From Oopsacas minuta (Eukaryota; Animalia; Porifera): a stretch of 64,000 nucleotides of DNA. The translations under genes and the position numbers were made by a program. The notes beneath the pieces were generated by a model. The model had not been told where the DNA came from. It saw only the letters and a program-made list of their open reading frames with translations, and searched no databases. Below are positions 8,976 through 30,465 of the stretch, in pieces; position 1 is the first letter of the stretch, and each line of letters opens with the position of its first letter. Location: positions 11,651-75,650 of the forward strand of contig JAKMXF010000029.1 of assembly GCA_024704765.1 (NCBI GenBank). Reading direction: 5' to 3'.

Positions 8976-10168
8976 ATTATACTGAGGAAATCGAGTATGC
9001 TGAGTCCTAATATGATATTGTAGACACATTTTGTGTATATTTGTTTACTTTTAGGTACATAAAGTAAACAAATTTCAAATTCGTAGTAGATTCATACTTT
9101 CAACGGCTATAATGGGGTAATCGAGTATGCTGAGTCCGAATATGATATTGTAAACAACATCTATCTATCTATCTATCTATATTATTCAATCTCAATTATT
9201 GTTTGTCTGTTTGTTTGTCCGTTGTTATGTAGATACAAAGTTGTTATTTATGAACTTGCTACAAAGGGCTACCGAGGGGTAAGTAAGTAGTCAGTACGCT
9301 GAATCCGAATTTCGCATTATCAAGGCTTCTCAAATGTAAATGTATCGTTGTTTTATGAATACAAAGTAAACAAATTATCCTAAATCATAAAATGTACGTA
9401 GATACTTGCCCTCAATGGCTACAAAGGGTGTTGATCTTACAAAATAATTCAATAACATATATGCCATATACGTATATTTGTGAATTACATGGTTCTAAAT
9501 ATATCTATATTAAAATACTCAAAAAGGCCGTCAATTTGGAGAATAATGGATATCTGGAGGGCAATGCGCCGAGTTAATTGTGAAGCAATTTCAACTTGAA
9601 ACTGCAATTGTCCAATATGATGACGTCAGAATAGGTAACATATTGAGGGATACCTGCGATTCAAATTTCAATTTTCTCTCATGTATATTGGCTGAGCAGT
9701 GGCCATTAATGTGATATTTCGGAAATCCAAAAAGGCAATTACGTCATAATTTCGTCATAGGTTTGAACTTTCGTCTAAGACTCTAACTCGACCGAGCCAG
9801 GCCCAAAGTACCCATCCCCTTTCTTAGAAAAATTATCTCTGGGGAAATTCCAGTTTCTTCAATCAATTCTGGACAAATAGACATAGAAATATATACATAT
9901 ATATACTTACATCAGATTAAATGCGTTAATAATATAATAATATAGATAAAATTTGAAATCCAGGGAAATTAAATCACGAGATTTTGAGATAAATATCCAG
10001 GGAAATTAAATCACGAGATTTTGAGATAATTATCCAGGGAAATAGTTAGAAATGGTTGATAATTATATCTGATAGTTAATTAAGTAGTTAGCATAGGATG
10101 ATCAGTTAATAGAAATGAGCATTCACTAATTGAGTAATCAGAGAGGGGACTGAATGTTGGAGGATATA

Positions 10169-10170
<2 letters not shown>

Positions 10171-10202
<32 letters not shown>
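10171..10202. repeat. (AT)n microsatellite upstream of 7TM gene A
   Basis: About 16 AT units seen directly. Confidence 0.9.
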
Positions 10203-10236: not shown

Positions 10237-11418
10237 ATGAACAGTAGCATCACTACATCCCAAAAACATTATGATAACATAATTTTTTCACATATAAACA
10301 AAATTCATAGTATTATTACGCCAATATTCTTCCTAAACATTCTACTTATTTTATTATTCTCCAGTTCATGGGCAATATATTCAATCAGTAAATTGCTGAA
10401 AGATTACAGAAAAGAGAAATTGAATTCTAAACTAATTAACAGCCGACCAGAACATGTGTGGCTCAACGAGATGCAAAATTTTAGGACAAACAGAATAAAA
10501 CATATTTTCCTCTTAGCTATATGTTTGAGTGATATTGGATTTACATTTTCAATCGTTTACCAGGAATTTCTTGCAATACCAGGAATTTATAACAGCACTC
10601 CTTGGTTGGAAAAATATTATTTTGGGGAAAAGCTAGTATTTATTGACAAACATATAAATACTTTCAATAATATACAAGTATTTGTAACGTCGACAGCCTC
10701 TTGTATAGTGCATGCTATAACCACAATATCTGTCTACTCTATGGCATTATTTGTTCGTATTCTAACACAGTTTATGGTATATCAATACAGTTATTTCAAA
10801 TCACAACTGAATTTAAAGTTTGAGTTATATATCTCACTTTCCTGTCTTATCGTCCTATTCATTATGGCTGTAGTTCAACAACCACAACTAATAATGATAT
10901 ATAATGTTTGTATTGTAATGGTGGTAACCTATGAATATGTCTCGTTTCTCATTGCAAGTAGAAAATTGTGTCTTTTACTCAAGCAACGACTTTCTGATGC
11001 AATTCAACATGAAAACCAATCTAGAACTGTAATACTCTACTACAAAACAGTATACAATGATTATAAGAAAGGATCAATTGTTATGTTAATAGCATTCTTT
11101 GCTCAATATTTGGGTTTCTCCATCTACTGTATCAATCCAGTTATTATAAATATTATTAGAGATGCCTTACCCAATGAAGATGATATTGAGGCTATGAATA
11201 TTATTGTTTTATGTATTTCTACATTTCAGTTAATTGAAATAATTGTAGGAACACTAGGAACTAGCATACAGATATTACTCTATTTGACTGTTTCTCTATG
11301 CAGGACATTTCGGAGCATTTATCATCGTATTAAGCTGAATGACAATATTTCTTCTAACAGATCTTCTCTCAAAATACTGATTGAAAGAAATAATACAGCT
11401 TACAGAATGAAAATGTGA
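10237..11418 (+). CDS. Lineage-specific intronless 7TM (GPCR-like) protein, paralogue A, 393 aa
   Basis: Intact ORF with seven hydrophobic segments and basic predicted ICL1/ICL3. Close paralogue of 24139..25326 and 16404..17569. No canonical rhodopsin DRY/NPxxY motifs, so the GPCR label rests on topology only. Confidence 0.8.
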   Translation: MNSSITTSQKHYDNIIFSHINKIHSIITPIFFLNILLILLFSSSWAIYSISKLLKDYRKEKLNSKLINSRPEHVWLNEMQNFRTNRIKHIFLLAICLSDIGFTFSIVYQEFLAIPGIYNSTPWLEKYYFGEKLVFIDKHINTFNNIQVFVTSTASCIVHAITTISVYSMALFVRILTQFMVYQYSYFKSQLNLKFELYISLSCLIVLFIMAVVQQPQLIMIYNVCIVMVVTYEYVSFLIASRKLCLLLKQRLSDAIQHENQSRTVILYYKTVYNDYKKGSIVMLIAFFAQYLGFSIYCINPVIINIIRDALPNEDDIEAMNIIVLCISTFQLIEIIVGTLGTSIQILLYLTVSLCRTFRSIYHRIKLNDNISSNRSSLKILIERNNTAYRMKM

Positions 11419-11591
11419 AATAATGATTGTATATTGCAGATAATAATTGATTTACATTTGTATTATTATATTACAGGTTATATAATTCGTTGATTTATTC
11501 TAGATTAATCTCTCCGTATTATTATATACTATAGTCAATAGATTTGTTATAACTATAATAGTATATTTATGAGTATTTATGTACACTGTAT

Positions 11592-14285
11592 CAGGCTTGG
11601 ACTGGGTCACGAATAAACCGGGTCATCGGGTCAACCGGGTCACTATTTTCAATAAATTAGCGGGTCTGAACCGGGTCACTGATTTTGACTTGACCCGGTT
11701 TATATCTTTATAGATAATTAAATTATAACGGTTTGTAAATCATGAAGATTCAGTCAATATTAGTTAGACGTTTCATTTTCATGAATCATTAGTATTTTAC
11801 TAACTTGTTTGGTATCATTACTACTGTATACTTATATACATATATACTCTTATGTACGTATATAGATATGTAATATACTTTTGTATGTTTAGAGATGGAT
11901 TGTGCTGGTATTAGTAAGAAAGTTGAAAATGAGATTTATACCTTAAAAGTAAAATCTTCCACACGTTTGAACATAAGTCCTTTTGGAAATATTTTTCAGA
12001 AGTTTTGAACGATAACGGAAACATTATTTTTGGAGTAGCATGCTGTAACCATTGTCTCAAATGCATTATTTATAAAATGAAAGTGGATAGTGGTAAGATT
12101 ATTGATTATGGAACAAAGAATTTGAATGTCACATACGATATTGTAGTCCAGATGTATCATCATCCTCACAGGTTAGAATCACGTCTCTTCTTAATAGAAG
12201 TTACTTCTAAGGATATTATAAATAAACAGGATGCTCAAAAAATTCTTATCTCTAGTAGAAATTTCATTGCGGGGGGCATTTTTGTCATTTAATACCATTG
12301 GAAATCCACAATTCATCCTTTTCTCTCAAGAAATGATCAGAATTGGTGCAAAATATGGTAATGTGAGTGCTTCTAATATACTTCCTGGACGAAAGGCTAT
12401 ATCAAAATCAACAGTTGAACAGATCAATACTATCAAACAAGATATTTGTTCTAGACTCCAAGATCCAATACAGAGGGATGCTGTTGCTTTCACAACAGAT
12501 CTTTGGACAGATAATGTTATGAATTGAAGTTACCTAGATGTTTCCTTTTTCTGGATTTCACAGGGTACGGATGAGAGTGATATTGGTAAAGAATTATGGA
12601 CCCTCAAACGCGCTATGTATGCTTGCAAAGTTTTTCCCAAAATAAAAACCTCTGAAAATATTGAGTTTGAGCTAGATCAAATTTTAACAGAAGTATATTG
12701 TGATCCTACTAATACTCCTGTTACAACAGACAAGGGAGCAAATATGGTGGCTGCTACTGCACAAAAGATTAGGATAGATTGTGCCTGTCACAGAATTAAT
12801 ACCGCGATTAAAACTGGATGGGAACGAGCTATGATGGAAAATGAGGAACTCGACCAGCTTCATGATGACGTTAATAAGGCAGTTACATTTGCAAAAAAAT
12901 CATCTGGAATTCAATCGGAACTACCTATATCACTGAAAAGAGGTGGTAAGACAAGGCCATGGAGAAGTCTTTACTCAATGTTTAACTCGATTTTGCAGTC
13001 ATATGGAAAGTTATCAGACATATTAACAGAGAAGAATAAGGCTTACATTGTTGCAGGAATAGACTTGAATCTTTTGGCTATCGTCACGAAGTTTTTTGAA
13101 AAACTTAATCGTATATTCGATATCCTCGAATTTGGATCTATAGCTAGTATTCAGAATGTGGCACCCTCATATTATGCTCTTCAAAATGCTTGGGAAATAG
13201 AAACAGATGATGATCCATTAACACGTATTCTGAGACGAATAATGACAGAAGAACTTGTACAAAAGGTGTGGACATCTCTAAATTCTATCCATTTTATTGC
13301 AGCTTACCTCGATCCTACACTAAAATCATTTCTATTCAGTGAAGAATAAACAAGATCGCATCATTTTCCTTAAAACTGCAAGAGAAGGTATTATACTTGC
13401 ATTTAAAGAGAAATTAATTCCTCCCCCACAATTCCAAATTCAGGAAAATCAGGTAGATGAACCTCTTCTGCCATCAGCTCCTAAAAGTAATAGATTAGAT
13501 CCACTTTTATGCTTTAGGAACTGTAGTACTACAGTTTCAACTAATAATTATACGAATTGGAATGAAGAATTTGGAGATCAGAATTAACAGACTATGAAAA
13601 GATCATTTCGATTCAATATGATGAAGATATCTTTGATCCTATAAAGTGGTGGGGGAAACACAGTTGCAGATTCCCAATTACCAGTTTCCTGTCACAGTCA
13701 TTTTTAGTAATTCAGGCTAGTTCGGCTGAATCGGAACGCCACTTTAGTTCTGCCGGTCGCGTTACGAGGAAAGAGCGGGCAAAATTGAATCCAGATACAG
13801 TGGAGGGGTGAGTTCTTCTTAATGATGCATTGAAAAAGAAGATAATATGACAGACTTCACTTAGTATCTCTCCAATTATACTACTAATCTTTATCTCCAT
13901 TAATCATAATTATCATTTGTTCTTAGCGTTACTTAAATATATTAAATTTCATATATCAAAATCAGAACATATTTTCAGGACTTCTGGAACAAAAATATGG
14001 TGCTAACAGAAAACACTAGGGCCCCAGCTACTATATATCCCAACTTTAACTATTAGGACCCTAGGCGAGTTTTAAAACACTATGCCTTGTTCAGACTTAT
14101 CAACCCTTTCTACAAATTTCCCTGGATTTTAATTGCCAAATCCCAGGATATTAAAACTTAGTAAAATCTAATCGTTATCAAATCGCATGAATATAGAAAA
14201 TTAATGTTTTGAAAAACCGGGTTACCGGGTCAGAGCTTTCAACCATTTCTACCGGGTCAGGAAATCATGACCCGATCCAAGCCTG
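11592..14285 (+). mobile_element. hAT transposon, full length (2694 bp), decayed
   Basis: TIRs CAGGCTTGGACTGGGTCA and the reverse complement of TGACCCGATCCAAGCCTG. Perfect 8-bp TSD CACTGTAT at 11584-11591 and 14286-14293. Subterminal accgggtca repeats. An empty site with a single CACTGTAT is present at 25492-25499. Confidence 0.95.
12005..13851 (+). pseudogene. hAT transposase pseudogene (frameshifts and stops)
   Basis: Fragments carry FTTDLWTD, TDKGANMVAA, CACHRIN (CxxH), TRPW, AAYLDP and the C-terminal dimerisation motif IKWWG...QASSAESERHFSSAG. At least four lesions. Confidence 0.9.
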
Positions 14286-14372
14286 CACTGTATTATTAAA
14301 TCAGAATGAATGTTTAATTATCTAATATCCTCATGAAAGAGACTAATTGAATGTAATCAAGGATGTAGTAAG

Positions 14373-14587
14373 TTCAGTTCGGCTGTCACGTATTTCAGAA
14401 TTCAATTTCTCTTTTCTGTCATCTTTCAGCAATTTACGGATTGAATATATTGCCCATGAACTGGAGAATATTAAAATAAGTAGAAAGTTTAGGAAGAATA
14501 TTGGCGAAAAATACTATGAATTTTGTTTATATGAGGCAAAATTTTATTATTGTAATGTTTTTGGGATGTAGTGATGCTACTGTTCAT
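14373..14587 (-). pseudogene. Truncated, inverted 5' fragment of a 7TM paralogue (first ~70 codons, 1-nt deletion), with its upstream flank extending to ~14860
   Basis: The reverse complement reads ATGAACAGTAGCATCACTACATCCCAAAAACAT..., matching 10237-10452. Upstream homology matches ~9890-10236. It breaks off at 14373, where the sequence switches to the 3' flank of gene A. Confidence 0.9.
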
Positions 14588-14877
14588 TTCTTGTGTATTA
14601 CAGTTGATATCTTTTTCTCATATATATATATATCCTCCACCAGTCAGTCCCCCTCTGGTTACTCAATTAGTAAATGCTCATTTCTATTAACTGATCATCC
14701 TATGCTAACTACTTAATTAACTATCAGATATAATTATCAACCATTTCTAACTATTTCCCTGGATAATTATCTCAAAATTTCGGGATTCAATTTCCCTGAG
14801 TTTCTAATTTTATCTATATTATTATATTATTAACGCATTTAATATGATGTAAGTATATATATATATATATATACATA

Positions 14878-15450
14878 CAGAGTGGGCCAAAAATTGGGCC
14901 CGAACAATTTGCTTCGATGCTGCTTAATATTTAGGAGAGATAACAAAACCTTATAGTTATAGAGCTAAAATGGCGTACAAGATGTATACAAGCTATTATT
15001 ATCGTAGGTTGAAAGTCTAAGAGGATTAGAGCTCAGGGGCGAGATGGACACCATCAAAATAGTCCCTTTTTTGGATTTTTGAGGAAAAATTCCAATTACA
15101 TTCTTCAGAACTATTTCTCCCGGCATGACTTGCACGGTCTTCGGACTTGCTAATTAGGTTTTTAACTGTTCTCTCAGGCTGAAAACTCTTAACCCAACCA
15201 TGAATTCTTGATTTCCAGGGCGCATTTTTGACATCGAATATATGCTGATATTTTGTGTAATCTCCTTGAAAGACCGGGATTCAAAAATTCTCTGAATTCA
15301 CAAAGACTTGTACTGAATACTCTATTATTCGTCTTTGGATTATCTAACATATATTTAAAGAGAATAAATAGAACAGTATTGCTTTGTTTGACTAATAGTT
15401 TCAAGATGGCCTGAAATGTACACGGGGCCGGTTGTTTTTGGCTCACTCGG
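14878..15450. mobile_element. Tc1-like MITE, ~570 bp
   Basis: TA-flanked imperfect TIRs cagagtgggccaaaaa and the reverse complement of tttttggctcactcgg. Confidence 0.6.
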
Positions 15451-16403
15451 TATTCCAATGTTCGTATGACCAGAATTGATTGAAGAAACTGGAAGATCCC
15501 CAGAGCTGAATTTTGCATAGAGGACAGGGGTACTTTGGGCCTGGCTCGGACAAGTTCGAGTCTTGGACGAAAGTTCAAACCTATGACGAAATTATGACGT
15601 AATTGTCACAATTTTGGATTTTAAAATATCACATTAATGGCCACTGCTCAGCCAATATACATGAGAGAATTCTGAAATTTGAATCGCAGGTATCCCTAAT
15701 GGTATAAATATGTATCTCTATGTATTATTGTTTATTAATTGACCAATTAAATTTACCAATATTTTACATTAAGAATAAATACATCGACAACAAAATCTTT
15801 GAGTTTATTATTCCGCGGATATTCAACTAAATGTTGCTTGAATACACATGTAAGCATGTTAAATATATTTCAACGAGTGAAGCAGCCAAAATGACGAAAA
15901 AGTGCCAAAGACAAATGTGAAAAAGGTAAATAATGAACACTTTCATAAAAGTCTACGTAAACTTATAAAGTAGAATGAATGAATGATTAATGTGGTCTGT
16001 TCTCTATAGAACCTCTACTTAGAGTCGTTTTAATGGTTTATATGTACTTGATATATTCTATATCTATACTATGTATAATAGGGGCTGTTCAAATGTTACG
16101 TTACGCTACAAGGGGGAAGGGGTGGTATGTGAAATGTGACAGCTCCATTCCTTTTGTATTATATAACGGTCCAAAAGCGTGACACAGGGAGGCTAGGAGG
16201 AGGTGCCAATATTTATGGAATTTACACTACGTAACGTTTGAACGGACTAATATATCAATAAGAATACGAGAGCACCCTAAGGGTGCCGCCCGCGAACGCG
16301 AAGTGTACTCGATCAGCGCAGCGTAAGACAGCAAAGCTTCCTTATATTCTATAATACGTGTATAGGTAGTAATTATATTTGTATGCAATTGGCAATCATT
16401 ATT

Positions 16404-17569
16404 TCACATTTTCATTCTGTAAGCTGTATTGTTTCTTTCAATCAAACGTTTGAGAGAAGATCTGTTAGAAGAAATATTGTTATTCAGCTTAATACGATGA
16501 TAAATGCTCCGAAATGTCCTGCGTAGAGAAACAGTCAAATAGAGTAATATCTGTATGTTAGTTCCTAGTATTAACAAAATTATTTCTATTGTGTTAACGT
16601 ATGAAAGAATATTATAAATAGTATCAGCCTCATTATGTGTCCAAATGTTGGAATCTTCAACCAATTTCATAATAACTGGATTGATACAGTAGATGGAGAA
16701 ACCCAAATATTGAGCAAAGAATGCTATTAACATAACAATTGATCCTTTCTTATAATCATTGTATACTGTTTTGTAGTAGAGTATTACAGTTTTAGATTGG
16801 TTTTCATGTTGAATTGCATCAGAAAGTCGTTGTTTGAGTAAAAGACACAATTTTCTACTTACAATGAGAAGCAAGACATATTCATAGATTACCACCATTA
16901 CATATCATTATTAGTTGTGGTTGTGGTACTACAGCCATAATGAATAGGACGATAAGACAGGAAAGTGAGATATATAACTCAAACTTTAAATTCAGTTGTG
17001 ATTTGAAATAACTGTATTGATATACCATAAACTGTGTTAGAATACGAACAAATAATGCTATAGAGTAGACAGATATTGTGGTTACAGCATTCGCTATACG
17101 ACGAATCTTTGAGTGTATCAAAAGATCTAACGGAATGTAACTATTTATATTTTCTGAATTGTATACTAGTTGTATTTGAGGCCAGAAATGTTGCAACCCA
17201 ATCTCTGATAATTTTTTAAGATAAAAAATTACAATATAAATCACAACGGAGACGATTGAAATTGTCATTGTAATTTCACTCAAACATATGGCCAAGAGGA
17301 AGCTATGTTTTATTCTGTTTATTTTGAAATTCGGCATCCCATTTAGCGTACATTTTCAGGTCGGCTATTCCATTCAGCTTCATTTTCCTCTCTTTTGCAA
17401 TTTTTCTGTAATCTATGAATTAAACATATTGCCCATGAAGTCGAGAATATTAGAATAAGAGTGAAATTTAGATAGAATATCAACGCGAAAGTGGTACTAA
17501 CAAGAGAGTATATTCTGTAGCCATAAAGTTTCTGGATAATTTCCTCACTAGTTTTTGAATATTAATCAT
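16404..17569 (-). pseudogene. 7TM paralogue B, frameshifted pseudogene
   Basis: Pieces align to A and C over the whole length. Lesions: a 14-nt deletion between tgtaat repeats at ~16895, a 1-nt deletion at ~17345, and probably a further shift near the start. Confidence 0.88.
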
Positions 17570-18095
17570 TTACCTAACCAATAATATTGGAGCATGCTAA
17601 CTGCTGTAGGATAATATATACTTAGATATTACGTACTATTTAGGAATAATTGGGTAGTTTATTTAGGAAAAAATACCTAAAATTGGTTGAGAATTGTAAA
17701 AGGTTAAATTTCCTATTTGTAATCATTATCAAATTAATATTTTCACTTATGTAATTGTAATCATTTAGGAATAATTATTTTGGATATTATCAAATCTCTA
17801 TTGTAATTGTAGTTATAGGAAATATAAACCTTGCCTAGTTATCAAGATACCCAGTTTTCAATATATTCGTACTGACTTGCTCTCAAGGTATACATCGGAG
17901 TATGGGAGCAACCAAGTCAGTACATCCTCAGTTATCTCAAGTACATTATTCTTGGAATATCAAGTATGCTGTTCGGATAACTGAATGCATGTATGAAATT
18001 CTTAAGATGAAATCACTTCTTGAGATTATATGGAATTATGATTTTACTAATAGCATTACATAGCATAGTGGCTCAGTTTAAAATGGTTGACTTAG

Positions 18096-18173
18096 TATAT
18101 ATGTTATGGGCAGTATGAGAAATTGGGCATTAAGCATAATGCCCAATTTCTCATACTGCCCATAACATATATA
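18096..18173. repeat. Perfect 37-bp inverted repeat with a 4-nt loop
   Basis: tatatatgttatgggcagtatgagaaattgggcatta-agca-taatgcccaatttctcatactgcccataacatatata. Confidence 0.95.
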
Positions 18174-20759
18174 TACATTAGCGCAACTAGGCTTATGAGT
18201 CAGTGTGGGCAAATATGACTCTCCTTATACTTTTTGTAGTACGGTGGAGTCAAATCTGGGTGGGCGATATACCCACCAAAATTGGCCTTAGTTGCACCTA
18301 TGTATATAAATGTTACGGTCAATACCTGAAATCCGAATATACTTTAGTACAGTGCAGTAGCTCAGTATTGAAATAGGTGCCTGAAATTTATCTACCGTGT
18401 CGACTACTAGTTAGCGACTCTGTACTGAGATTATTGCCAATATATACCATTTTTAAGGCCAAATTATTAGCAAAATCAAAATTTCTCCAAAAGGGAGAGC
18501 TGAAGAAACTGGCTCACTAACTAGTAGTTCACACAGTACATAAATTTAATGCACCTATTTCAATACTGAGTCACTATTCTGAAGTATACTCGGCACATTA
18601 TAAATAATACAGACCATGTTACGCGTATTGACTAACAGGTTGAATCTCAGTAGGCGTACTGACTAGCTATCTCGCGTGTTTTGCTCGCCTTTCACACCTT
18701 TATGGATTAAGACACCAAATTTGGCATGTGTACTCGTAGTGACATATAATTGTGCACCTGACATTTGAAAAGTTTCCAATGTGTATATTTTCACACTTTT
18801 TGACACCTCTGCATTTTAGCCCAATCAGATTGAAAGGTTTTACAATTTGTCATAAATGCATAAAATTAATTCTGATGGAGTGTTTGTAATTAAATTAGCA
18901 CTGTAATGTATATGTATTGATGTAGACTGCCATTCTATTGGTCAAGACATTCTATTAAATATATATATATATACACTGATTTATCATATGATCAAACATA
19001 TCTTCACACATTTTAGTGAATATTTCAAATCATCCTTGAGATTAGCTTCCACTTGTTAAATAGGGGTGAACAGGACGTAGAATGCGATTTTGACATATTT
19101 AAATGTCTAATAAGATTTGCTAATATGGATATTTAGTAGAATAATATAGTTTCAATATTCCACTGAAATAAATTTGGTAAAATTTAAGTCGGTGTAGATG
19201 GTGATTGGAGATTTTACTCTCCCGACTATATACAGTAGAAGGCACAGTACAGGGACGGCGCCAGGATTCATCTTTTTGACATTTTTGGGTAGGCCCATAT
19301 TTGAGATGGTAGGTACGCATAGAGGGAAGGGCGCCGAATTTGCCTTGAACCGAGTGGGGGTTCGGTGGTCCTCCATAGGGAATTTTTGAAAAATGAGAAA
19401 ACCTGATACTTGTTACTTGGGTCATTTCAAAAGTACTGATCACTAATCATAATTGATACTAATATTAATATAAATGAACACATTAAACTTATTCCAGATT
19501 GTTTAATCAATTCGCTATTAATGGTCCTCAAATGTAAAGAATATTAGATATATACCTTTCTATTTACGTATTATTTTATATTAATAACTATCATAAGTCT
19601 GCTATTGAGTGTCATTTTGTCATTTCCTTATTTAATAAATAATGATTGCTAGCAATTCTATTGATTTAGTTGAAGTGTCTTGGTTTGTGGCCATTTTGAA
19701 TAGAAATCCAACAGAAGTACACATACAATATCTACAAGAATCATTAGAAAAATCCATTTTGAAAAGGATGAAGATGGAAAATTAGAGCATCTACAGGCCC
19801 AAATTGAATTCTTAAAATCAAAGCTGAATATGTTACTGCAAATTCGAACAAAAAAATTCGAAACTACTTCTTCAGGTATGCATGCTAAGGAAGGAACTCC
19901 ATTTTATCCAAAATAATGGGCAATTAGTAATAGAAAATTCAATATTTTATGAGGCTTCACAAATGGAGGAAGACCCGGATGTCAGTCAAATGACTAGTGA
20001 ATTGAAAGATGAGACAGACGAAAATAAATGATACCTCAAAAGGAGAAGATTCGTGTCCCAATCATTTTCATATCATATTCAGTTTCCCTATTCTATTACT
20101 CATCTTATATGTTAGTCAATAGACATATTCCTTGTTAGTTATTTATCTTCTTTCTCAATATATTTTCACTAATTATCCTAGAAAACTACTTAATTGAATC
20201 ATTGCCAACTAATATAATAATTTTGGGCCAGTGCTTCCTGCAAATCATTATAATACAAAGAGTAAATTTGTCCCAAAGACCAACTCATGCTTACCCACTG
20301 ATGGGTTTATTACATATGATACCCAGCTAAAACATTAATTCCAAATAATCGAATTGTATTCCAGTTTGCATTTGATTTGGAATGAATGTAAAGAGAAGTA
20401 TGCTCATGATTCGAAGCGCGACCTTGAAAGCTGCTTTTAATTGTTTCTCTATCTCTTACCGTTTTCAAGTAAACTTGATGGGAAAATTGGACTGCTTGCG
20501 AAGATCTTGGAATCACTCCTTAGTTATTCTGCAATCTGCATTTCTGCGCACCACCTGATGTCAAAAACTACAAATTCACTAGTAATCTCAGAAGGTTGGA
20601 TATCAGCTATTGTTCTAAATTTCTCTCCTGGCAAAAAATTTATGATGTCACATATAAAAATTGAAAAAATTGGTACTTAGTTATTAAAACTACTTTATTT
20701 TTAAATATTTTGATATATATTACTTATTGATTTGATATGTCGAAAGACAATATTCCACT

Positions 20760-22552
20760 CAAGTATCTCCTGCAGAAAGGGTGGAAGCACTTGAGACATG
20801 AGAATGAGACAGCTGAAGAGCGAGCTATTCGTCTAGAGGAACAAAGGCGAAACAAAGATCACTGAGAGAGCTCCAATCTGATCAAGACCGTGGTAGGAGC
20901 CAAAATTCTCAGCGTATATACTAGGACACTAGGAGACAAAATGAAAGCCAAGATCAAACAGCTGACTGTTTGGACTATAAGCGAAAACACCAGGCTGACC
21001 TCAGAGAGATCGAGTCTGAGGCTGAAAGAGCCAGGCGCCTAGACGACAAAAGAAAACACCAAGCTTGCCTTAGAGAAACCCAGACTGAAGATGAGCGAAT
21101 GGTTCGTTTGCAATTACAAACATCTGTAGACAGGGGCGGATACAGGGGGGGGGGGGGGGCATAACCCCCCCTGAGATTTTGAGATCTAATTTTCTGTCTC
21201 AAAATGAATAACTAATAAGCTAAGTTAACTTAAATTGTTCCTCTATATGTGGTAGAAATAGCTGTAGTTCGCTATTTCAGAGTATAACTTTTACAAATTT
21301 TCTGGGGGTTTGCCTCCAGACCTCCCTTAGGGATAACTCGCTACGCTTGCAACTTGGCCCCCCCTGAGATTATATCCTGGATACGCCCCTGTCTGCAGAT
21401 AATAGAAATAAATCACTACAATCTAAGAGAGGTATCTTAATATTGCTAGGCTACATATTGCTACTGAAGTATGTGATATCTTAGTTGGTGGAGAATGAAT
21501 AGGTAGCATGACCTATAATTGTTCATTCTATGACGCCAAATTTTGGGAGGGGAAAGGTTATCTACAAGTGCAAAATTTTGTTTCAAGTTTTCACTTTGCT
21601 GTGGAGAGGATAAAGTCGTTCTTCCCCCTACAGACTAACTCACTGAACTTCTAGATCACCTTCTTACATCTAATACTAGAGGTAGGAATCATATAAGAGC
21701 ATACAATTGACTTCTTGCGTTCTGTCCCCTCGCAGCGAATATTGACTAAGAACTGGCGAACGCTAGGCGTGGAGTATACACATTCTGCATTCAAAGGGTT
21801 GTACATCATTACATTAGAAGTTTGCTTGCAAATCGTGACGAGACACCTGCTTTTGCACGAATCTATATTCACGATGGTACCGAAGAAGCTGAAGTTGAAA
21901 TCGCCAGAGACATCTAGGAGAGACAAAACTTCCTGAGTTAAAGATCTGGCAGAGAATGCTCCATGAGTTAGCCCCTATGTTTCTTATTTCAAACATGCTG
22001 ATCTGATGCGAGAACAGGGCGGAATGGATATCAGGATGGTCATCCGAGCTGATGGTAACCCAGATCCCCGCCGATACAACCTTCCTACTGCCCGGAAATT
22101 GCAGTACTGCTTCCCGGATCAGGATACTCCGAAGCTGTACGGAACAGAGATATAGTGCTACATCTATTTGGTGGGAATCAAACGTATTACTGAAACTCAT
22201 TGTGCTTATGATTCTCTACAATATGTTTTGTTGTTTCCAGAAGGAAGTCACGGTTGGCATATTGGTATCCTTCATAGCAGAGGCGGAGGATTTGATAATG
22301 CACTGGAGTTCTACAGCTACTGCTTGATGGTTAGGCCTGGAGCCCACCTGTGCCTCTCTGGAAGACTTTTCCATCAGTACATCGTAGCCATGTACGCCAA
22401 GATTGAACAACAGAGGGTAAACTATATCAAGCTAGATCAACAGAAGATACGAGTTGATTTGTATAGCGGATTAGCTGATGCTGTAGCGAGAGGTGACACC
22501 AATGCAACAGATTTGGGACGGACTGTTATTCTTCCATCAAGTTTCACTAACT
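20760..22552 (+). pseudogene. Helitron Rep/Hel protein relic (N-terminal part only)
   Basis: N-terminal ETAEERAIRLE-type repeats, then IGSMTYNC, CCGEDKVVLP, DPRRYNLPT, HCAYDSLQYVLLFPEGSHGW and SGRLFHQYIVAMYAKIEQQRVNYIKLDQQKIRVDLYSGLADA...LGRTVILPSSFT (the Helitron_like_N region). Truncated before the RCR motifs and carries many stops. Confidence 0.9.
21131..21391. mobile_element. hAT-type MITE (261 bp) inserted in the Helitron relic
   Basis: TIRs CAGGGGCGGATACAGG and the reverse complement of CCTGGATACGCCCCTG. 8-bp TSD tctgtaga/tctgcaga. Confidence 0.88.
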
Positions 22553-24138
22553 AGAGGTTCAAATAAATGCTAAGGATAAATTGGGACCAAAGATTAGTGT
22601 GACTATTTCAAGATGTTCACTTATCAGAGGTTTCACTAACGGACGTTTCAGTGAATAACAAAGACACGAATTTGTCAATTTTTGCAACCTCACAGTTAGT
22701 CACCGGAGTTCAGAATGAGTTGATATTCCAATGACAGAAACTTCCTAGATCAGTATAGATAATTCCAAATGACATCTCTCTACGTGGACTGGCTGTATAA
22801 TTATAACGTGTAAAGTGTGCTCGAATTTACGAAATTTTGAAATTTTGCAAAAAGACCCAATTTTACGTCGCCGTTATTTCATCAAGGTTTCAGAATGGGA
22901 TGAAATTAAATTTACAGAAACCTCCTAGGCTAGTATTATCATATTCTAAATGGCATCTCTCTAGGTCCACTAGTTCATTATTATAACTATGTGCTCGATT
23001 TTCCTAATATTTTCCCTTCTAACTTCCTACTCATGTTTTACCTTGACCCCATGAGTTATAGTCTACCGCATCGATTTCTTCATTGTGCATTTCCAGAGCA
23101 TTAAGTGCTCCCGTCCTGAAAAAGGATCGGGGCTCATACCTCTGCTCCTAACTCAGAAAAGGCCACCTTCTTAATTCAATAATGAATACTGAATCGCCCG
23201 CTGCCAGTGCATGCATGACATTTGGATTACCCAGTAATGGGAAACTATTTATTAAATTGGAGTGGCCTAAAGTAAACAAATAATCAAAACATTAAAATAA
23301 TCGTCAAGACTTCCCCTTAACAGAGATATAGGGGTAACAGAGTATACTGAATCCGAATTTAGCATTTCAATTGAATACTCATATGTAAATAATAGTTGTT
23401 CTTAGTAAAATTCGAGGCAGGAGTTACATGTGAAAACACTGTGTCCGCCGGCCGCGAAGCACAAGCAAGCGAAGCGGCTCGTTATGTACTTGAAATTGTA
23501 AAGTTATGCAATAGATTGTAAGGAAATACTAATTACTTTGTTCAAACTAACTTATGAAACATTTTGCACCTCAAACTTTGATATATCATAATGGCATTGA
23601 GCTTTTATTAAATCTATACCTGATACCTTATATCCATTTAGCCAGTGAGATAGATTGTTAGAAATGCATTATAATGAAAGAGGACTACCGATTGCAGCGC
23701 AGCGCAGCACGAGCAAGCGAAGCACACCTAGTATATTATTACAAAATTTGGTAAATTCATTGAAGAAAATATTTCATATAGGTGACTTTAATTCAAAGTG
23801 ATTACGAATACACTACAGGAAAATTTGAATTCGAAATGTTTACAAAATCAATGTTCTAATCCCTATGAAATGACAGTCATTTTAGCAGAAACGATCTTCA
23901 TAGTTCATGCTGCATAAAATCACTTCGAAATTTTATGATGATTAATAAATTGAATATTTATATTATCCGTATCTACCCTTATCAACTACACATAATACTA
24001 CTAAACTACAAATATCCTGATAGTAAGGTATCCCTAAGTAGTAGTTATGATTACTGATCAGTAAGCTAACGTAAGCAATAATAGGGTAAGCAAAGATTTG
24101 GCGTATTTAAATAGGCAAATAATTAACTACACAAGAAA

Positions 24139-25326
24139 ATGACCAAAAGCAGCGAAACAATTCCTCAAAAACCCTATGACAAGATATTTTTCTCTCTCAC
24201 AAACAAAATTAGCAGTATTTTTGCCAGTATATTCTATCTCAATTTGATACTTATTTTGATATTCTCCAGTTCATGGGCAATATATTTAATTCATAAATTG
24301 ATGAAAGATGACAGAAAAGAGAAATTGAATTCTAAACTAGTTAACAGCCGACCTGAACATGTGTGGCTCAATGAGATGCAAAATTATAGGACAAACAGAA
24401 TAAAACATATTTTCCTCTTAGCTATATGTTTGAGTGAAATTGGAATGACATTTTCAATAATTTCCCAGTTGATTTATAACGAAGTTTCAGAAATTTATTT
24501 CATTCAAAGCACTACAGGGTATGGGATGGAATATTTAGGGGATCAGCTAGTATATATTACAGGATATGTACATGCTTACGGTCAAATTGATAGTTTGGTA
24601 ATGAATACAATCCCTCGTATAGCGCTTGCTGTAATCACAATATCTATCTACTCTATAGCATTATTTGTTCGTATTCTAACACAGTTTATGGTATATCAAT
24701 ACAGTTATTTCAAATCACAACTGAATTTAAAGTTTGAGTTATATATCTCACTTTCCTGTCTTATCGTCCTATTCATTATGGCAGTAGTACCACAACCACA
24801 ACTAATAATGATGTGTAATATTTGTATTGTAATGGTGGTAATCTATGAATATGTCTTGCTTCTCATTGCAAATAGAAAATTGTGTCTTTTACTCAAACAA
24901 CGGCTTTCTGATGCAATTCAACATGAAAACCAATCTAGAACTGTAATACTCTACTACAAAACAGTATACAATGATTATAAGAAAGGATCAATTGTTATGT
25001 TAATAGCATTCTTTGCTCAATATTTGGGTTTCTCCATCTACTGTATCAATCCAGTTATTATAAAGATAGCTAAAGATTCAATCATTTTGACAGCTAATGA
25101 AGCTCTAACTCTCATAAAAATTGATTCGTATGCTACAAAATTAGAATTATTTCCTTTAATACTTGGAACTAGCATACAGATATTGCTCTATTTGACTGTT
25201 TCTCTACGCAGGACATTTCGGAGCATTTATCATCGTATTAAGCTGAATAACAATATTTCTTCTAACAGATCTTCTCTCAAACGTTTGATTGAAAGGAACA
25301 ATGCAGCTTACAGAATGAAAATGTGA
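24139..25326 (+). CDS. Lineage-specific intronless 7TM (GPCR-like) protein, paralogue C, 395 aa
   Basis: Intact ORF with seven hydrophobic segments. Long blocks are identical to paralogue A. Confidence 0.8.
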   Translation: MTKSSETIPQKPYDKIFFSLTNKISSIFASIFYLNLILILIFSSSWAIYLIHKLMKDDRKEKLNSKLVNSRPEHVWLNEMQNYRTNRIKHIFLLAICLSEIGMTFSIISQLIYNEVSEIYFIQSTTGYGMEYLGDQLVYITGYVHAYGQIDSLVMNTIPRIALAVITISIYSIALFVRILTQFMVYQYSYFKSQLNLKFELYISLSCLIVLFIMAVVPQPQLIMMCNICIVMVVIYEYVLLLIANRKLCLLLKQRLSDAIQHENQSRTVILYYKTVYNDYKKGSIVMLIAFFAQYLGFSIYCINPVIIKIAKDSIILTANEALTLIKIDSYATKLELFPLILGTSIQILLYLTVSLRRTFRSIYHRIKLNNNISSNRSSLKRLIERNNAAYRMKM

Positions 25327-25991
25327 ATTAATGATTGTATATTGCAGATAATAATTGATTTACATTTGTATTATTATATTACAGGTTATATAATTCGTTG
25401 ATTTATTCTAGATTAACCTCTCCGTATTATTATATACTATAGTCAATAGATTTGTTATAACTATAATAGTATATTTATGAGTATTTATGTACACTGTATT
25501 ATTAAATCAGAATGAATGTTTAATTATCTAATATCCTCACGAAAGAGACTAATTGGATGTAATCAAGTGTGTAGTAAGCCTTCTGCCACTGTCAGAGACC
25601 ACGCTAGGCCCGAAGCTAGAGCATTTAGTGTTACAATTAGAATTCGAAATCAACATTCAGAACCGATGTATTTCTTACTACACATCATTATTCCGCGAAC
25701 AGGCGTCTTTGAATTTCAGCTAAGACTCGAATGTAATAATTATACATAAACATCTAAAATAAGCTACGTAGTACTTGCATAATTTATTAATAGGTAAATA
25801 TCCTTCATCAGTTAGGATAATATGATATTACAGCTAATCGTAATCTATATTAATAATTCTGGCGAAGAATAAATGTTTGTAGTAAGATCCTTCAATGAAT
25901 ATTAAATATTTTGTAAAACTATATGCACAAAGTTAATCCATAAAACATATATAAAGGTTGGCATACGAATACAACTCTTAAGGTAAATGTA

Positions 25992-27119
25992 ATGGGGTCT
26001 GTGTTACATCATTTTAACTCTCCAAATATCGGAAAAGATATTATTTATATATTTCAGGTAATTACATCACTGTTATTTTCCGCAATTTTTGTATTAAATA
26101 TAATTTGGTGTGGTTACTATTGCAATCACTGGCTGATTGTTAGAAAGAGAATAAAATATTTGAAACAACAGACATGCGAAACGGAATTAGAAAAACTGCG
26201 AAACAGTAAAGTTGATTTTGTGAAGTCAACTTTCATTATTCTAATCTCATTATGTGAGATAGTATCAATCTTAGTAATTCCAGTTACTATCCTAGCAAGG
26301 GATGCTGCAATTAGTCAGAATTTACGCGTTATGAACGGGGAAACTTCTTTATCAAATTGTAGTGGAGAAAAATCACCAATTCTATTTCAAAATCACACTT
26401 ATAGAATATTAATCTCGATTTCTGCTTATTCATTTATTAATATATTTTGGCTAATTATTGGACTCAATTCATACCTTTCAAAGGCATACAGCACAAGAAG
26501 GAACATTAAGTACTCAGAACCAATAGTTTGGGTAGGATTAACAGTAACTACTGCATTATTATTAATCATAGCTTCTTACTGGAAAATTTTTATCATCTTC
26601 TTACCACTTACACCAATAATTCCTATTATACAATTTGTAGTCATGTATAAATCAACGAGAAAGGTCTACGAAAATATCAGGCGAAGAACATCGGACTCAT
26701 GGTTCGAGAATAGAGAAGATTTCATCCGGTTAGAGAGAATGGGAAAAGCTTACCTAAGTGGATCGAATGGAATATTAACTTTTCTTTTCTTGGCTATAGT
26801 AACCTCTTTGTATACAATATTTGCAGAATATTACAAATTGCTACTAACATCAAATTCCGTTCTCAAGGAATCACTAAATACACGCTATAGTTTTGTAGAA
26901 CTATGCTCGAGAAATTCACGGGTTTTTGAGTTGACCTTTACATTTAATGAATTCATGAATATATTACTTCCATTCTTATGCAGTTTTATACTGTTTATCC
27001 TGCATCTGTTAATCTTGAAGGAATGTATTATAAGAATATTGAAGAGACGGAAATTATATAAATCAGCAGAAGGAAGATTTAATCATGAAATTTACCAACC
27101 ATTGATTGGAGAGAAATAA
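25992..27119 (+). CDS. Divergent intronless 7TM protein D, 375 aa
   Basis: Same architecture: TM1, basic loop, then KSTFIILISLCEI (compare KHIFLLAICLSEI in A/C), seven hydrophobic segments and a basic predicted ICL3. Confidence 0.75.
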   Translation: MGSVLHHFNSPNIGKDIIYIFQVITSLLFSAIFVLNIIWCGYYCNHWLIVRKRIKYLKQQTCETELEKLRNSKVDFVKSTFIILISLCEIVSILVIPVTILARDAAISQNLRVMNGETSLSNCSGEKSPILFQNHTYRILISISAYSFINIFWLIIGLNSYLSKAYSTRRNIKYSEPIVWVGLTVTTALLLIIASYWKIFIIFLPLTPIIPIIQFVVMYKSTRKVYENIRRRTSDSWFENREDFIRLERMGKAYLSGSNGILTFLFLAIVTSLYTIFAEYYKLLLTSNSVLKESLNTRYSFVELCSRNSRVFELTFTFNEFMNILLPFLCSFILFILHLLILKECIIRILKRRKLYKSAEGRFNHEIYQPLIGEK

Positions 27120-29382: not shown

Positions 29383-30465
29383 TCAATTTACTAGAGGTTC
29401 CAGCATTAATCTCCCGGAGAAAGATCTCTCAATATGGTACCTATGAGCATAACGATATTCGAACAGAATCTTATTACAGAAGTATACCAGAGAGTAGATT
29501 ATGAGAGTAGGTACGAACATGAGAAGTGTGCAGAAAAGGAATGATAGAATTAGATAGAACATGATGGTTACAGTGATATTGAAGGCAGGGGATTTGATAA
29601 CGGTGCTATTCCCTAGGTATGTATGTTCTAGAATGCAAGGCTCAGTTACCAGAGACAAGGGTAGATAAATGAAGAATCCTGATAGTATATAAAGTATCAG
29701 AGGAATACCACACAGTATAAACCAAATTATGAATCTTTTGAATTGTTTAGTACTGTGAATGAACTCTTTTGTTGTAGAATCATCTTCTCCATTCATATAC
29801 TTTAAATCATCGCATTTCATCCGTAGAATAATAAATAAACGATTTGTATTCATAACCAATCTTACATACATTATTAGCATTATCGTAATACTTATGATAT
29901 GTGCTAGTATGGTGCCTACCCCTGATAATGTCAATACAACTATGAGTACTGAGAATTTTATTACCTGTTTCACCTGATATCTCAGTTTGTGTTCTTGATT
30001 GCTGGTCGAGTAAAATCGAATATGGTAGCGAACTAGGATGTCTAGAAGTAGTAAAGTTAGAGTATAGCAATACACGGATAGGACATTACCAATGACTACA
30101 TGTGAATACAACCTGGCAATCCTGTAGAATATCGCGCAATTCACAGAGATATACGAGTCAACTAATCGCCAAAGTATGTCTCCAGCAAAATGCAATGACC
30201 CTATCATAAGTTCACTCAATGTTATGCCCATGAATATCTTTAACCTTCTGTCATCGTGTCTGTAATTCTTTAGGATGTTAACAGAGTCTGAAATATCATC
30301 TGAAACATATACCCTCTCCAATGTGCTCATTTTCTTTCTCAAATCACGGATTTTAATATACAAATAGCCTAGCCATGGAATCTGCATTATTACTTGGAAT
30401 ACAATTAATATACTCGCAATAAAGTAACCTATTTTGTATGCTTCAGGGTAGAGAGGAAAATCCAT
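29383..30465 (-). CDS. Divergent intronless 7TM protein E, 360 aa
   Basis: Intact ORF with seven hydrophobic segments. RLKIFMGITLSELM matches the family TM2 motif. Confidence 0.75.
   Translation of the reverse strand: MDFPLYPEAYKIGYFIASILIVFQVIMQIPWLGYLYIKIRDLRKKMSTLERVYVSDDISDSVNILKNYRHDDRRLKIFMGITLSELMIGSLHFAGDILWRLVDSYISVNCAIFYRIARLYSHVVIGNVLSVYCYTLTLLLLDILVRYHIRFYSTSNQEHKLRYQVKQVIKFSVLIVVLTLSGVGTILAHIISITIMLIMYVRLVMNTNRLFIILRMKCDDLKYMNGEDDSTTKEFIHSTKQFKRFIIWFILCGIPLILYILSGFFIYLPLSLVTEPCILEHTYLGNSTVIKSPAFNITVTIMFYLILSFLFCTLLMFVPTLIIYSLVYFCNKILFEYRYAHRYHIERSFSGRLMLEPLVN

What the first reader, a model, noticed from the sequence alone, without database searches (positions are those of the whole stretch)
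10237..25326. 7TM receptor family with nucleotide-identical intracellular blocks and hypervariable extracellular loops: candidate diversified recognition system
Seen: paralogues A (10237), B (16404-17569) and C (24139) share blocks identical at the DNA level, synonymous sites included. A 10744-10868 equals C 24658-24782 (125 bp, also identical in B). A 10990-11150 equals C 24904-25064 (161 bp, one mismatch in B). These blocks cover inner TM3, ICL2, TM4, ICL3 and TM6. The C-tails are near-identical, and ~190 bp of non-coding 3' flank differs at only two positions between A and C. Directly next to these blocks, predicted ECL1 (~55 aa after LSxI.xTFSI) and ECL3/outer TM7 (~35 aa after CINPVI) are barely alignable. 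ECL1 begins VYQEFLAIPGIYNSTPWLEKYY in A, ISQLIYNEVSEIYFIQSTTGYGME in C and VSVVIYIVIFYLKKLSEIGLQHFW in B. The few substitutions inside the constant region cluster at the short ECL2. Established: a constant signalling face with a variable ligand face is typical of immune, allorecognition and chemosensory receptor families. Inference: identity at silent sites cannot come from protein selection alone, so gene conversion or recombination probably homogenises the signalling module while ligand-facing segments stay diverse. This would be a modular receptor repertoire, possibly for microbes, allorecognition or chemosensing. The function is unknown.
Basis: partly seen in the sequence, partly recalled or inferred. 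Interest (0 to 1): 0.85.

Follow-up and report, generated by a model that had tools for sequence, protein, structure and literature searches.

The report
Glass-sponge orphan receptor genes, partly homogenised
Three neighbouring genes of a glass sponge encode unnamed membrane proteins with the predicted shape of G-protein-coupled receptors; copying between the genes keeps their inner parts almost identical while two outward-facing loops differ, a known way for receptor gene families to evolve.

Summary
The window is Oopsacas minuta (Hexactinellida) contig JAKMXF010000029.1. A (10237-11418) and C (24139-25326) are intact. B (16404-~17569, minus strand) is a pseudogene. The 125-bp and 161-bp blocks are exactly identical between A and C.

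Synonymous divergence is strongly uneven. For B against A or C, dS is 0.02 in the central block and 0.6-0.7 in TM1-TM2. For A against C, dS is 0.05 centrally, 0.85 in the second variable segment and saturated at the N-terminus. Segment relationships conflict, and A/C identity runs 173 bp past the stop codon. This shows interlocus gene conversion.

An AlphaFold model (pLDDT 84) matches only GPCRs (Z 14-18). No Pfam or PDB sequence match exists. Charge distribution and N-terminal sequons place both variable segments (ECL1, ECL3) outside the cell.

About 35 homologues from glass-sponge-type metagenome assemblies vary in the same two segments. There omega is about 1 in the loops and 0.26-0.5 elsewhere, with only nominal signs of positive selection.

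I found no support for a dedicated diversification or allorecognition system. One related gene is monomorphic across at least four samples. Expression is untested.

The scan had already noted a glass-sponge-only GPCR-fold family on other DNA of this genome.

The parts
10237..11418 (+). Gene A, intact single-exon ORF of 393 aa, orphan GPCR-fold protein
   Evidence: ORF. AF2 model pLDDT 84.3, pTM 0.81, seven TM helices plus helix 8. Only GPCRs among structural matches. No Pfam hit.
10560..10722 (+). A var1: outer TM2, ECL1, outer TM3 (aa about 109-162)
   Evidence: 62.6% (A/C) and 51.9% (A/B) nt identity. A-C dS 0.25, dN 0.64. Family entropy 2.64 bits.
10723..11149 (+). A central constant block (TM3, ICL2, TM4, ECL2, TM5, ICL3, TM6); holds the exact blocks 10744-10868 and 10990-11150
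   Evidence: 96.7-98.1% identity among A, B and C; dS 0.02-0.05. A read contig of 10750-10874 has depth 413-431, against 38-85 for A-only pieces.
11150..11251 (+). A var2: outer TM6, ECL3, outer TM7 (aa about 305-338)
   Evidence: 51% (A/C), 55% (A/B) and 65% (C/B) identity. A-C dS 0.85, dN 0.82.
11252..11591 (+). A inner TM7, helix 8 and C-tail, plus 173 bp of 3' flank shared with C
   Evidence: Tail 93-97% identical among the three. The flank has 2 differences in 173 bp between A and C and is unrelated in B. The branch point at 11591 is seen in read contigs.
16404..17569 (-). Gene B, pseudogene: start lost, 1-bp deletion near 17348, 14-bp deletion near 16903. Its constant block is 16667-17079.
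   Evidence: Three-frame translation and indel list. Constant block 97.6-98.1% identical to A and C while TM1-TM2 is 73-77%. Its 3' flank appears in read contigs.
24139..25326 (+). Gene C, intact single-exon ORF of 395 aa: var1 24465-24636, constant block 24637-25063, var2 25064-25159, tail 25160-25326
   Evidence: The database holds it as P0001, called from a later Met.
25327..25499 (+). C 3' flank shared with A
25992..27119 (+). Gene D, 375-aa 7TM ORF, distant member of the same superfamily
   Evidence: 17 bits (E 1e-7 against this one sequence) to an A-subfamily profile built without it. Its own orthologue is P0091, and it resembles O. minuta LOD99_13899.
29383..30465 (-). Gene E, 360-aa 7TM ORF with the same architecture; link to the A subfamily weak
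   Evidence: Not significant against the A-subfamily profile. Orthologue P0059.

Best explanation
A, B and C belong to a small tandem cluster of single-exon genes for an unnamed, apparently glass-sponge-restricted protein family with a predicted GPCR fold. Shown: the cytoplasmic face (a long ICL1, ICL2, ICL3 with extended TM5/TM6, helix 8 and tail) is under strong purifying selection across the family. The N-terminus, a large ECL1 and ECL3 with the outer ends of TM6/TM7 evolve at roughly the neutral rate, with hints of episodic positive selection. Shown: on top of this, the neighbouring copies exchange sequence by interlocus gene conversion or unequal recombination. In O. minuta this recently homogenised the central block and tail of all three copies, including the pseudogene, and the 3' flank of A and C. 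The N-terminus, B's TM1-TM2 region and var2 kept older, divergent sequence. Inferred: the variable outer face sets ligand specificity and the constant inner face docks one common transducer, as in chemosensory or peptide-sensing GPCR families. Conversion tracts probably persist where sequence is already similar and selectively tolerated, not through a dedicated modular mechanism.
For: Mosaic ancestry: dS for A-B is 0.02 in the constant block and 0.73 in TM1-TM2 (Fisher 1.5e-10); for C-B 0.02 and 0.60 (1.5e-8); for A-C 0.05 against a saturated N-terminus (2e-10) and var2 0.85 (1.4e-6). Site patterns favour (A,C) in the 5' part (44:16) and (B,C) in var2 plus tail (10:30), P = 2e-6. Non-coding A/C flank is identical. 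Read contigs show the 125-bp block at about 6-8 times single-copy depth, branching to different flanks. Fold. Topology: about 30 K/R on the predicted inner loops against about 6.5 outside, and an N-terminal sequon in 74% of members. Family-wide constraint pattern; omega 0.26-0.55 in constant parts and 0.67-3.4 in loops. A tandem array of nine paralogues in a related species, with conversion tracts that include var1. O. minuta encodes 8 G-alpha subunits (PMC10280926).
Against: A silent-site longest-run test on A-C alone is not significant (P = 0.10). The case rests on regional dS contrasts and on B. Exact 100% identity could be slightly inflated by the SPAdes (k up to 99) and Pilon assembly. 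The fold is a prediction. No sequence link to any GPCR class exists. I found no RNA evidence of expression. Ligand, coupling and cell type are unknown.
Confidence: 0.7

Rival explanations
1. No gene conversion: A, B and C are recent duplicates, and the loops diverged only through very fast, positively selected substitution.
For: A-C var1 has dS 0.25, like its flanks (0.20), with dN 0.64 (omega about 2.6, one-sided Fisher 0.012). In the related array dS is roughly even across regions in many pairs, with loop omega up to 3.
Against: Selection cannot raise synonymous divergence. Var2 and the N-terminus of A-C, and TM1-TM2 of B, have dS 0.6 to saturation beside blocks at 0.02-0.05. Segment relationships conflict. 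B is a pseudogene yet keeps 98% identity in the block.
Confidence: 0.07
2. Assembly artefact: near-identical paralogues were collapsed or cross-polished, which created false identity.
For: The assembly is hybrid SPAdes with k up to 99 followed by default Pilon. The identical blocks (125 and 161 bp) exceed k.
Against: Independent Logan contigs of four runs carry the block as one unitig at about 6-8 times single-copy depth, so most copies share the same 31-mers. They branch into A, B, C and further flanks. A related species, assembled into long contigs with coverage-tagged names (metaMDBG-style naming, from my own knowledge), also has exact inter-paralogue runs of up to 151 bp. The statistics do not need exact identity.
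Confidence: 0.05
3. A dedicated diversified recognition repertoire (allorecognition or microbe sensing), in which loop cassettes are shuffled among many copies and are highly polymorphic between individuals.
For: In the related array var1 is 97% identical among three paralogues whose flanks differ. Reads hold at least two further A-like copies or alleles. Their var2 differs from A at 18 of about 100 bp, plus an in-frame 9-bp insertion in one, next to a 161-bp block with no difference; 13 of 16 changed codons are non-synonymous.
Against: Pooled loop omega is about 1, and the positive-selection signals are nominal (P 0.015-0.08, uncorrected for 12 tests). The single-copy relative P0005 is identical, with 0-1 synonymous change, in six assemblies from at least four BioSamples. 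Copy number is small. No diversification machinery or expression pattern is known.
Confidence: 0.1
4. The proteins are not receptors but another kind of 7TM protein, such as a transporter, a channel or a scaffold.
For: No GPCR sequence motif or profile match. The long conserved cytoplasmic helical extensions are atypical. Language-model neighbours are mixed orphan 7TM clusters, including THH1/TOM1 and GPR137-like.
Against: In a search of 48,161 PDB representatives independent of Foldseek, all 50 best matches are GPCRs at Z 14.1-17.0, each covering most of the chain. No PAQR, microbial rhodopsin or insect-type 7TM channel appears. The topology is N-out, C-in.
Confidence: 0.08

Closest known systems
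Vertebrate chemosensory and MRGPR-type GPCR multigene families (OR, TAS2R, V1R, MRGPRX)
   Same: Single-exon coding regions, tandem clusters with pseudogenes, lineage-specific expansion, interlocus gene conversion, and faster evolution of ligand-facing parts than of the cytoplasmic face (general knowledge of these families). TAS2R4 and MRGPRX2 are among the best structural matches.
   Different: No detectable sequence homology. Variability sits in a large ECL1 and in ECL3 with the outer TM6/7, not in ECL2 or the TM3-TM6 pocket. ECL2 is only about 6 residues and lacks the conserved cysteine. ICL1, TM5/TM6 and TM7 have long conserved cytoplasmic extensions.
Class A (rhodopsin-like) GPCRs, Pfam PF00001
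   Same: Predicted seven-helix arrangement plus helix 8, Z 14-18 to many solved class A receptors. A nearly invariant Arg in TM3 (R174), an acidic residue in TM2 (E99) and a Q-x-x-x-Y in TM7 (Q345, Y349) sit where DRY, D2.50 and NPxxY might lie. That correspondence is my inference from position only.
   Different: No profile match for any of 94 members. No DRY, NPxxY or CWxP consensus and no TM3-ECL2 disulfide.
Lineage-specific orphan GPCR-like expansions in early-branching or non-model animals (e.g. flatworm-specific orphan rhodopsins; sponge rhodopsin-like expansions)
   Same: A restricted taxonomic range. An exhaustive profile search of 1.84 billion representatives gave only 145 clusters. 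The only named one is an O. minuta hypothetical protein; the rest come from unnamed ENA assemblies, some labelled as metagenomes.
   Different: Those families still match the 7tm_1 profile (own knowledge); this one does not. I found no description of it in the O. minuta genome paper or in a 2025 GPCR survey that included O. minuta.
Concerted evolution with preserved binding-site diversity (MHC, KIR, opsin arrays)
   Same: Partial conversion tracts give paralogues that are near-identical in some segments and old in others.
   Different: There is no evidence here of balancing selection or high allelic polymorphism.

Membership tests
GPCR fold (7TM, N-out/C-in) | Seven transmembrane helices followed by an amphipathic helix 8 | tested here: met
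   AF2 model with pLDDT 84.3 and pTM 0.81. Helices 8-64, 72-119, 153-184, 193-212, 216-257, 263-310, 317-373 and 375-392. This is a prediction, not a solved structure.
GPCR fold (7TM, N-out/C-in) | Helix packing superposable on solved GPCRs and on no other 7TM fold | tested here: met
   Foldseek lists only GPCRs (E about 4e-3). VIA-align gives Z 16-18.5. In the independent wide search all top 50 are GPCRs at Z 14.1-17.0.
GPCR fold (7TM, N-out/C-in) | Extracellular N-terminus, cytoplasmic C-terminus | tested here: met
   Family means of K+R: ICL1 10.6, ICL2 2.3, ICL3 7.4, tail 9.8; N-terminus 1.8, ECL1 3.4, ECL2 0.4, ECL3 0.9. An N-terminal N-x-S/T sequon occurs in 74% of members. Computational only.
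Class A rhodopsin-like GPCR (PF00001) | Significant match to the 7tm_1 profile | tested here: not met
   No 7tm_1 hit at E up to 0.1 in any of 94 members, nor for A, B or C at E up to 1. A profile search of PDB sequences found no GPCR.
Class A rhodopsin-like GPCR (PF00001) | E/DRY (TM3), CWxP (TM6) and NPxxY (TM7) motifs | tested here: inconclusive
   Only partial look-alikes: V-R174-I in TM3, C-I-N-P in TM6 of A, B and C (not conserved in the family) and Q345-x-x-x-Y349 in TM7. No residue-level structural alignment was available.
Class A rhodopsin-like GPCR (PF00001) | Conserved TM3-ECL2 disulfide | tested here: not met
   ECL2 is about 6 residues, and ECL1 and ECL3 hold no conserved cysteine.
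Class A rhodopsin-like GPCR (PF00001) | Ligand-dependent coupling to heterotrimeric G proteins | not testable with these tools
   O. minuta has 8 G-alpha genes according to PMC10280926. No functional data exist.
Chemoreceptor-type multigene family (birth-and-death with conversion) | Tandem clusters of single-exon paralogues with pseudogenes | tested here: met
   A, B (pseudogene), C, D and E lie within 20 kb. A related species has nine intact paralogues in about 45 kb.
Chemoreceptor-type multigene family (birth-and-death with conversion) | Interlocus gene conversion between neighbours | tested here: met
   Regional dS contrasts with P down to 1.5e-10, conflicting site patterns with P = 2e-6, and an identical non-coding flank.
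Chemoreceptor-type multigene family (birth-and-death with conversion) | Ligand-facing residues under relaxed or positive selection | tested here: inconclusive
   Pooled omega is 0.89 (var1) and 1.17 (var2), against 0.26-0.41 in constant parts. By ML, omega is 2.95 (P 0.015) and 3.37 (P 0.08) in one loop of each subfamily, uncorrected. For A-C var1, omega is about 2.6 (P 0.012).
Chemoreceptor-type multigene family (birth-and-death with conversion) | Expression in sensory or otherwise specialised cells | not testable with these tools
   No run shown to be RNA holds the genes.
Diversified immune or allorecognition receptor system | Extreme allelic polymorphism between individuals | tested here: inconclusive
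   Not met for the relative P0005: 0-1 synonymous difference in 1173 bp across six assemblies from at least four BioSamples, although the look-up is by exact protein and so is biased. For the A-like genes, reads show extra variants that may be alleles or paralogues.
Diversified immune or allorecognition receptor system | Dedicated somatic or germline diversification mechanism | not tested
   Nothing in the window suggests one. Conversion tracts also cover var1 in the related array, which fits untargeted conversion.
Insect-type 7TM ion channels (OR/GR, 7TMIC) | Intracellular N-terminus, short extracellular C-terminus, matching fold | tested here: not met
   The charge distribution gives N-out with a 40-residue basic cytoplasmic tail. 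No such structure is among the top matches. One of 94 members gave a weak 7tm_6 hit (E 0.009), which I take as noise.

The most novel reading that the evidence does not exclude
The three genes are the assembled tip of a larger set of A-like copies. Read depth suggests about 6-8 copies of the constant block, and at least two extra var2 and flank versions exist. ECL1 and ECL3 cassettes would be reshuffled onto one constant signalling chassis by gene conversion and would be polymorphic between individuals. That would give a syncytial, neuron-less animal a combinatorially diversified GPCR-fold repertoire for self/non-self or microbe recognition.
Probability: 0.1. Interest if true: 0.85.

Novelty: new member of a known kind. 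Interest (0 to 1): 0.45.

Why it matters
Glass sponges have no neurons, and O. minuta lacks several core metazoan signalling genes. An unannotated, lineage-restricted family of GPCR-fold proteins with a strictly conserved cytoplasmic face and fast-evolving outer loops is a concrete candidate for how these animals sense chemicals, microbes or each other. The locus is also a clean, statistically supported case of partial interlocus gene conversion in an early-branching animal. The evolutionary mode itself (tandem duplication, pseudogenes, conversion, variable ligand face) is well known from other receptor families. The value therefore lies in the new family and its testable layout, not in a new mechanism.

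Tried and rejected
- Pfam scans of A, B, C and D, and of 94 family members, gave nothing relevant.
- A profile search of PDB sequences gave only chance hits to short helical chains.
- Language-model neighbours were mixed orphan 7TM clusters, which is a lead only.
- A silent-site longest-run test (GENECONV-like, same-amino-acid codons only) was not significant for A-C (P = 0.10) and was significant in only one related pair (P = 0.005). I therefore rely on regional dS contrasts and on B.
- Region-wide positive selection: pooled parsimony counts give omega of about 1, not above 1.
- RNA evidence: two run searches returned the same four runs of unknown kind, kept as contigs. No expression claim is possible.
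- The reads did not show B's 14-bp and 1-bp deletions. Contigs break at shared blocks, so this proves nothing.
- Other O. minuta copies: protein searches with the whole protein and with the C-terminal 231 aa found only C (P0001) from this genome. The scan-note search by sequence was blank.
- Species of the ENA homologues: record labels (BUSC20-1_SAMN144229xx_METAG, SRR11455651) resemble, from memory, the Vazella pourtalesii glass-sponge metagenomes (PRJNA613976, PMC7426153). No paper text links the accessions, so this stays unverified.
- The insect-type 7TM channel reading was rejected on topology and fold.
Full report
**Source and layout.** The window is Oopsacas minuta (Hexactinellida) contig JAKMXF010000029.1, positions 11651-75650. 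The database copy of gene C maps there, and the accession prefix belongs to the O. minuta genome paper.
- The region holds five uninterrupted 7TM ORFs: A 10237-11418 (+), B 16404-~17569 (-), C 24139-25326 (+), D 25992-27119 (+) and E 29383-30465 (-).
- Transposon remnants lie around them: hAT-like 12005-13587 and Helitron_like_N 22168-22554 between the receptor genes, and a Mos1/mariner remnant at 6325-7062 upstream of the cluster.

**Check of the observation.**
- The two blocks are exactly identical between A and C. The first is also exact in B; the second has two mismatches in B.
- Over the CDS, A and C differ at 209 of 1200 alignment columns. In 20,000 permutations of those positions the longest identical run was 79, against 161 and 125 observed.
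- Pairwise nucleotide identity by segment:

| Segment | A/C | A/B | C/B |
|---|---|---|---|
| N-terminus (first 90 bp) | 66% | 52% | 61% |
| TM1-ICL1-inner TM2 | 89% | 73% | 77% |
| var1 (10560-10722) | 63% | 52% | 62% |
| Central block (10723-11149) | 96.7% | 97.6% | 98.1% |
| var2 (11150-11251) | 51% | 55% | 65% |
| Inner TM7 to stop | 93% | 95% | 97% |
| 3' flank | 2 differences in 173 bp | unrelated | unrelated |

- B has no in-frame start codon, a 1-bp deletion near 17348 and a 14-bp deletion near 16903. It is a pseudogene in this assembly.

**Is the silent-site identity meaningful?**
- Nei-Gojobori estimates by region:

| Pair | Central block dS | Comparison region | dS | Fisher P |
|---|---|---|---|---|
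| A-B | 0.02 | TM1-TM2 | 0.73 | 1.5e-10 |
| C-B | 0.02 | TM1-TM2 | 0.60 | 1.5e-8 |
| A-C | 0.05 | TM1-TM2 | 0.20 | 0.02 |
| A-C | 0.05 | var2 | 0.85 | 1.4e-6 |
| A-C | 0.05 | N-terminus | saturated | 2e-10 |

- Site patterns favour (A,C) in the 5' part (44 against 16) but (B,C) in var2 plus tail (10 against 30), P = 2e-6. The non-coding flank again groups A with C.
- Protein-level selection cannot produce this, least of all in a pseudogene or in non-coding flank. Several partial conversion or recombination events of different ages are needed.
- A stricter longest-run test on silent sites of A-C alone is not significant (P = 0.10). The regional contrasts and B carry the argument.

**Assembly artefact?**
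- The assembly is hybrid SPAdes (k up to 99) followed by default Pilon. That procedure could erase a few real differences between near-identical copies.
- One contig covers exactly 10750-10874 at depth 431 (X1) and 413 (X3). A-only pieces have depth 38-85, and the A+C shared flank 115-127.
- The same 31-mers are therefore present in roughly 6-8 copies. Loose ends branch into the continuations of A, B and C, and into at least two others absent from the window.
- The identity is thus a property of the reads. More A-like copies or alleles exist than the three assembled here.
- One such variant could be rebuilt from the listed differences. It has no difference in the 161-bp block, 18 substitutions plus an in-frame 9-bp insertion in var2 (13 of 16 changed codons non-synonymous), and B/C-type states in the tail. 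This is the same mosaic again.

**What the proteins are.**
- No Pfam family matches A, B, C or D, or any of 94 family members. A family profile finds no GPCR among PDB sequences.
- An AlphaFold2 model of A, built on a 37-sequence alignment, has pLDDT 84.3 and pTM 0.81, with seven long helices and a helix 8.
- Foldseek lists only GPCRs, weakly. VIA-align gives Z 16-18.5 to TAS2R4, NTSR1, MRGPRX2 and others.
- In a search of 48,161 PDB representatives independent of Foldseek, all 50 best matches are GPCRs at Z 14.1-17.0.
- Positive charge marks ICL1, ICL2, ICL3 and the tail as cytoplasmic: about 30 K/R against about 6.5 on the other side. N-terminal glycosylation sequons occur in 74% of members.
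- Hence var1 is the outer TM2, ECL1 and outer TM3, and var2 is the outer TM6, ECL3 and outer TM7.
- Unusual features are a large ECL1 (about 35-45 residues, low pLDDT), a 6-residue ECL2 without cysteine, and long conserved cytoplasmic extensions of TM1, TM5, TM6 and TM7.

**Family and range.**
- A word-indexed search found 38 relatives at 39-49% identity. All come from unnamed ENA assemblies except C itself.
- An exhaustive profile search of 1.84 billion representatives found only 145 clusters, nearly all fragments or proteins of 300-440 aa.
- The only named member checked is an O. minuta hypothetical protein, LOD99_13899.
- Some ENA records are labelled as metagenomes of samples that I suspect, but could not verify, to be the glass sponge Vazella pourtalesii.
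- Across the alignment the same two segments and the N-terminus are hypervariable (entropy 2.5-2.9 bits). The intracellular loops are nearly invariant (0.76-1.05 bits).

**Related array.** One 1.27-Mb ENA contig carries nine intact paralogues in about 45 kb, all on one strand.
- In most close pairs there, dS is fairly even across regions (0.1-0.3) while dN is concentrated in the loops.
- Pooled parsimony counts give omega 0.89 (var1), 1.17 (var2), 0.99 (N-terminus), and 0.26-0.41 elsewhere.
- ML codon models give omega 2.95 for var2 in one subfamily (P = 0.015) and 3.37 for var1 in the other (P = 0.08). Constant parts give 0.26-0.55 except the tail of the second subfamily (0.92, not different from 1). 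None of this is corrected for 12 tests.
- In O. minuta, A-C var1 has dS 0.25 but dN 0.64 (one-sided P = 0.012).
- The constant/variable design is therefore mainly a difference in protein constraint, with suggestive but unproven episodic positive selection.
- The same array contains conversion tracts of the opposite kind. Var1 is 97% identical (dS 0-0.03) in three paralogues whose TM1-TM2 regions have dS 0.19-0.40 (silent-run P = 0.005 for one pair).
- Conversion is thus not aimed at the constant module.

**Against a hyper-polymorphic recognition system.** The single-copy relative P0005 differs by at most one synonymous base over 1173 bp in six assemblies from at least four BioSamples. The caveat is that the look-up finds only exact protein matches.

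**Literature.** The O. minuta genome paper surveys G proteins and GPCRs but does not describe this family. A 2025 survey of GPCR diversity that included the O. minuta proteome does not mention it in the passages I searched.

**Earlier scan notes.** The notes report a glass-sponge-only GPCR-fold family and other intronless 7TM clusters on other pieces of this genome. I did not test whether they are the same family.

**Verdict.** This is a real mosaic. It is best explained by interlocus gene conversion laid over strong constraint on the cytoplasmic face and near-neutral or episodically adaptive evolution of the outer loops, in an undescribed glass-sponge GPCR-fold family. The mechanism is ordinary for receptor gene families. 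The family and its layout are the new part.

Noticed in passing
window 10168-10202: A (TA)n microsatellite lies directly upstream of gene A's start codon. A and C share no similarity upstream of about 13 bp before the ATG.
   Followed up: no
window 11594-11700 and beyond: A/C flank homology ends where A carries a very high-copy repeat with a recurring CCGGGTCA motif. Read-contig depth there is 2,000-52,000, so it is probably a transposon insertion.
   Followed up: partly
window 9642-9872 (+) and about 15470-15700 (-): A 235-bp repeat at 88.5% identity lies upstream of A and beside B. It may be a small mobile element.
   Followed up: no
window 12005-13587; 21650-22554; 6325-7062: Degenerate hAT-like ORFs, a Helitron_like_N fragment (E 1.4e-11) and a Mos1/mariner transposase remnant lie between and beside the receptor genes.
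   Followed up: partly
window 60051-61613 (-): An uninterrupted 520-aa ORF with SEP and weak UBX domains (p47-like) sits in a 43.7% GC island within a genome region of about 32% GC. It may be a retrogene.
   Followed up: no
window 33116-33745 (-): An Erv26 cargo-adaptor gene lies just beyond the receptor cluster.
   Followed up: no
L006-L011 (gene P0005): A single-copy family member in the related species, flanked by a GFO_IDH_MocA oxidoreductase and a TRAF gene, is essentially identical across six assemblies. A hAT dimerisation-domain ORF sits beside it in one assembly.
   Followed up: partly
reads laid on window 10238-10386: Three versions of A's N-terminal region occur in one run at depths 37.8 (exact A), 37.4 (10 differences plus a 1-bp deletion) and 68.8 (11 differences). 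They may be alleles or unassembled paralogues.
   Followed up: no
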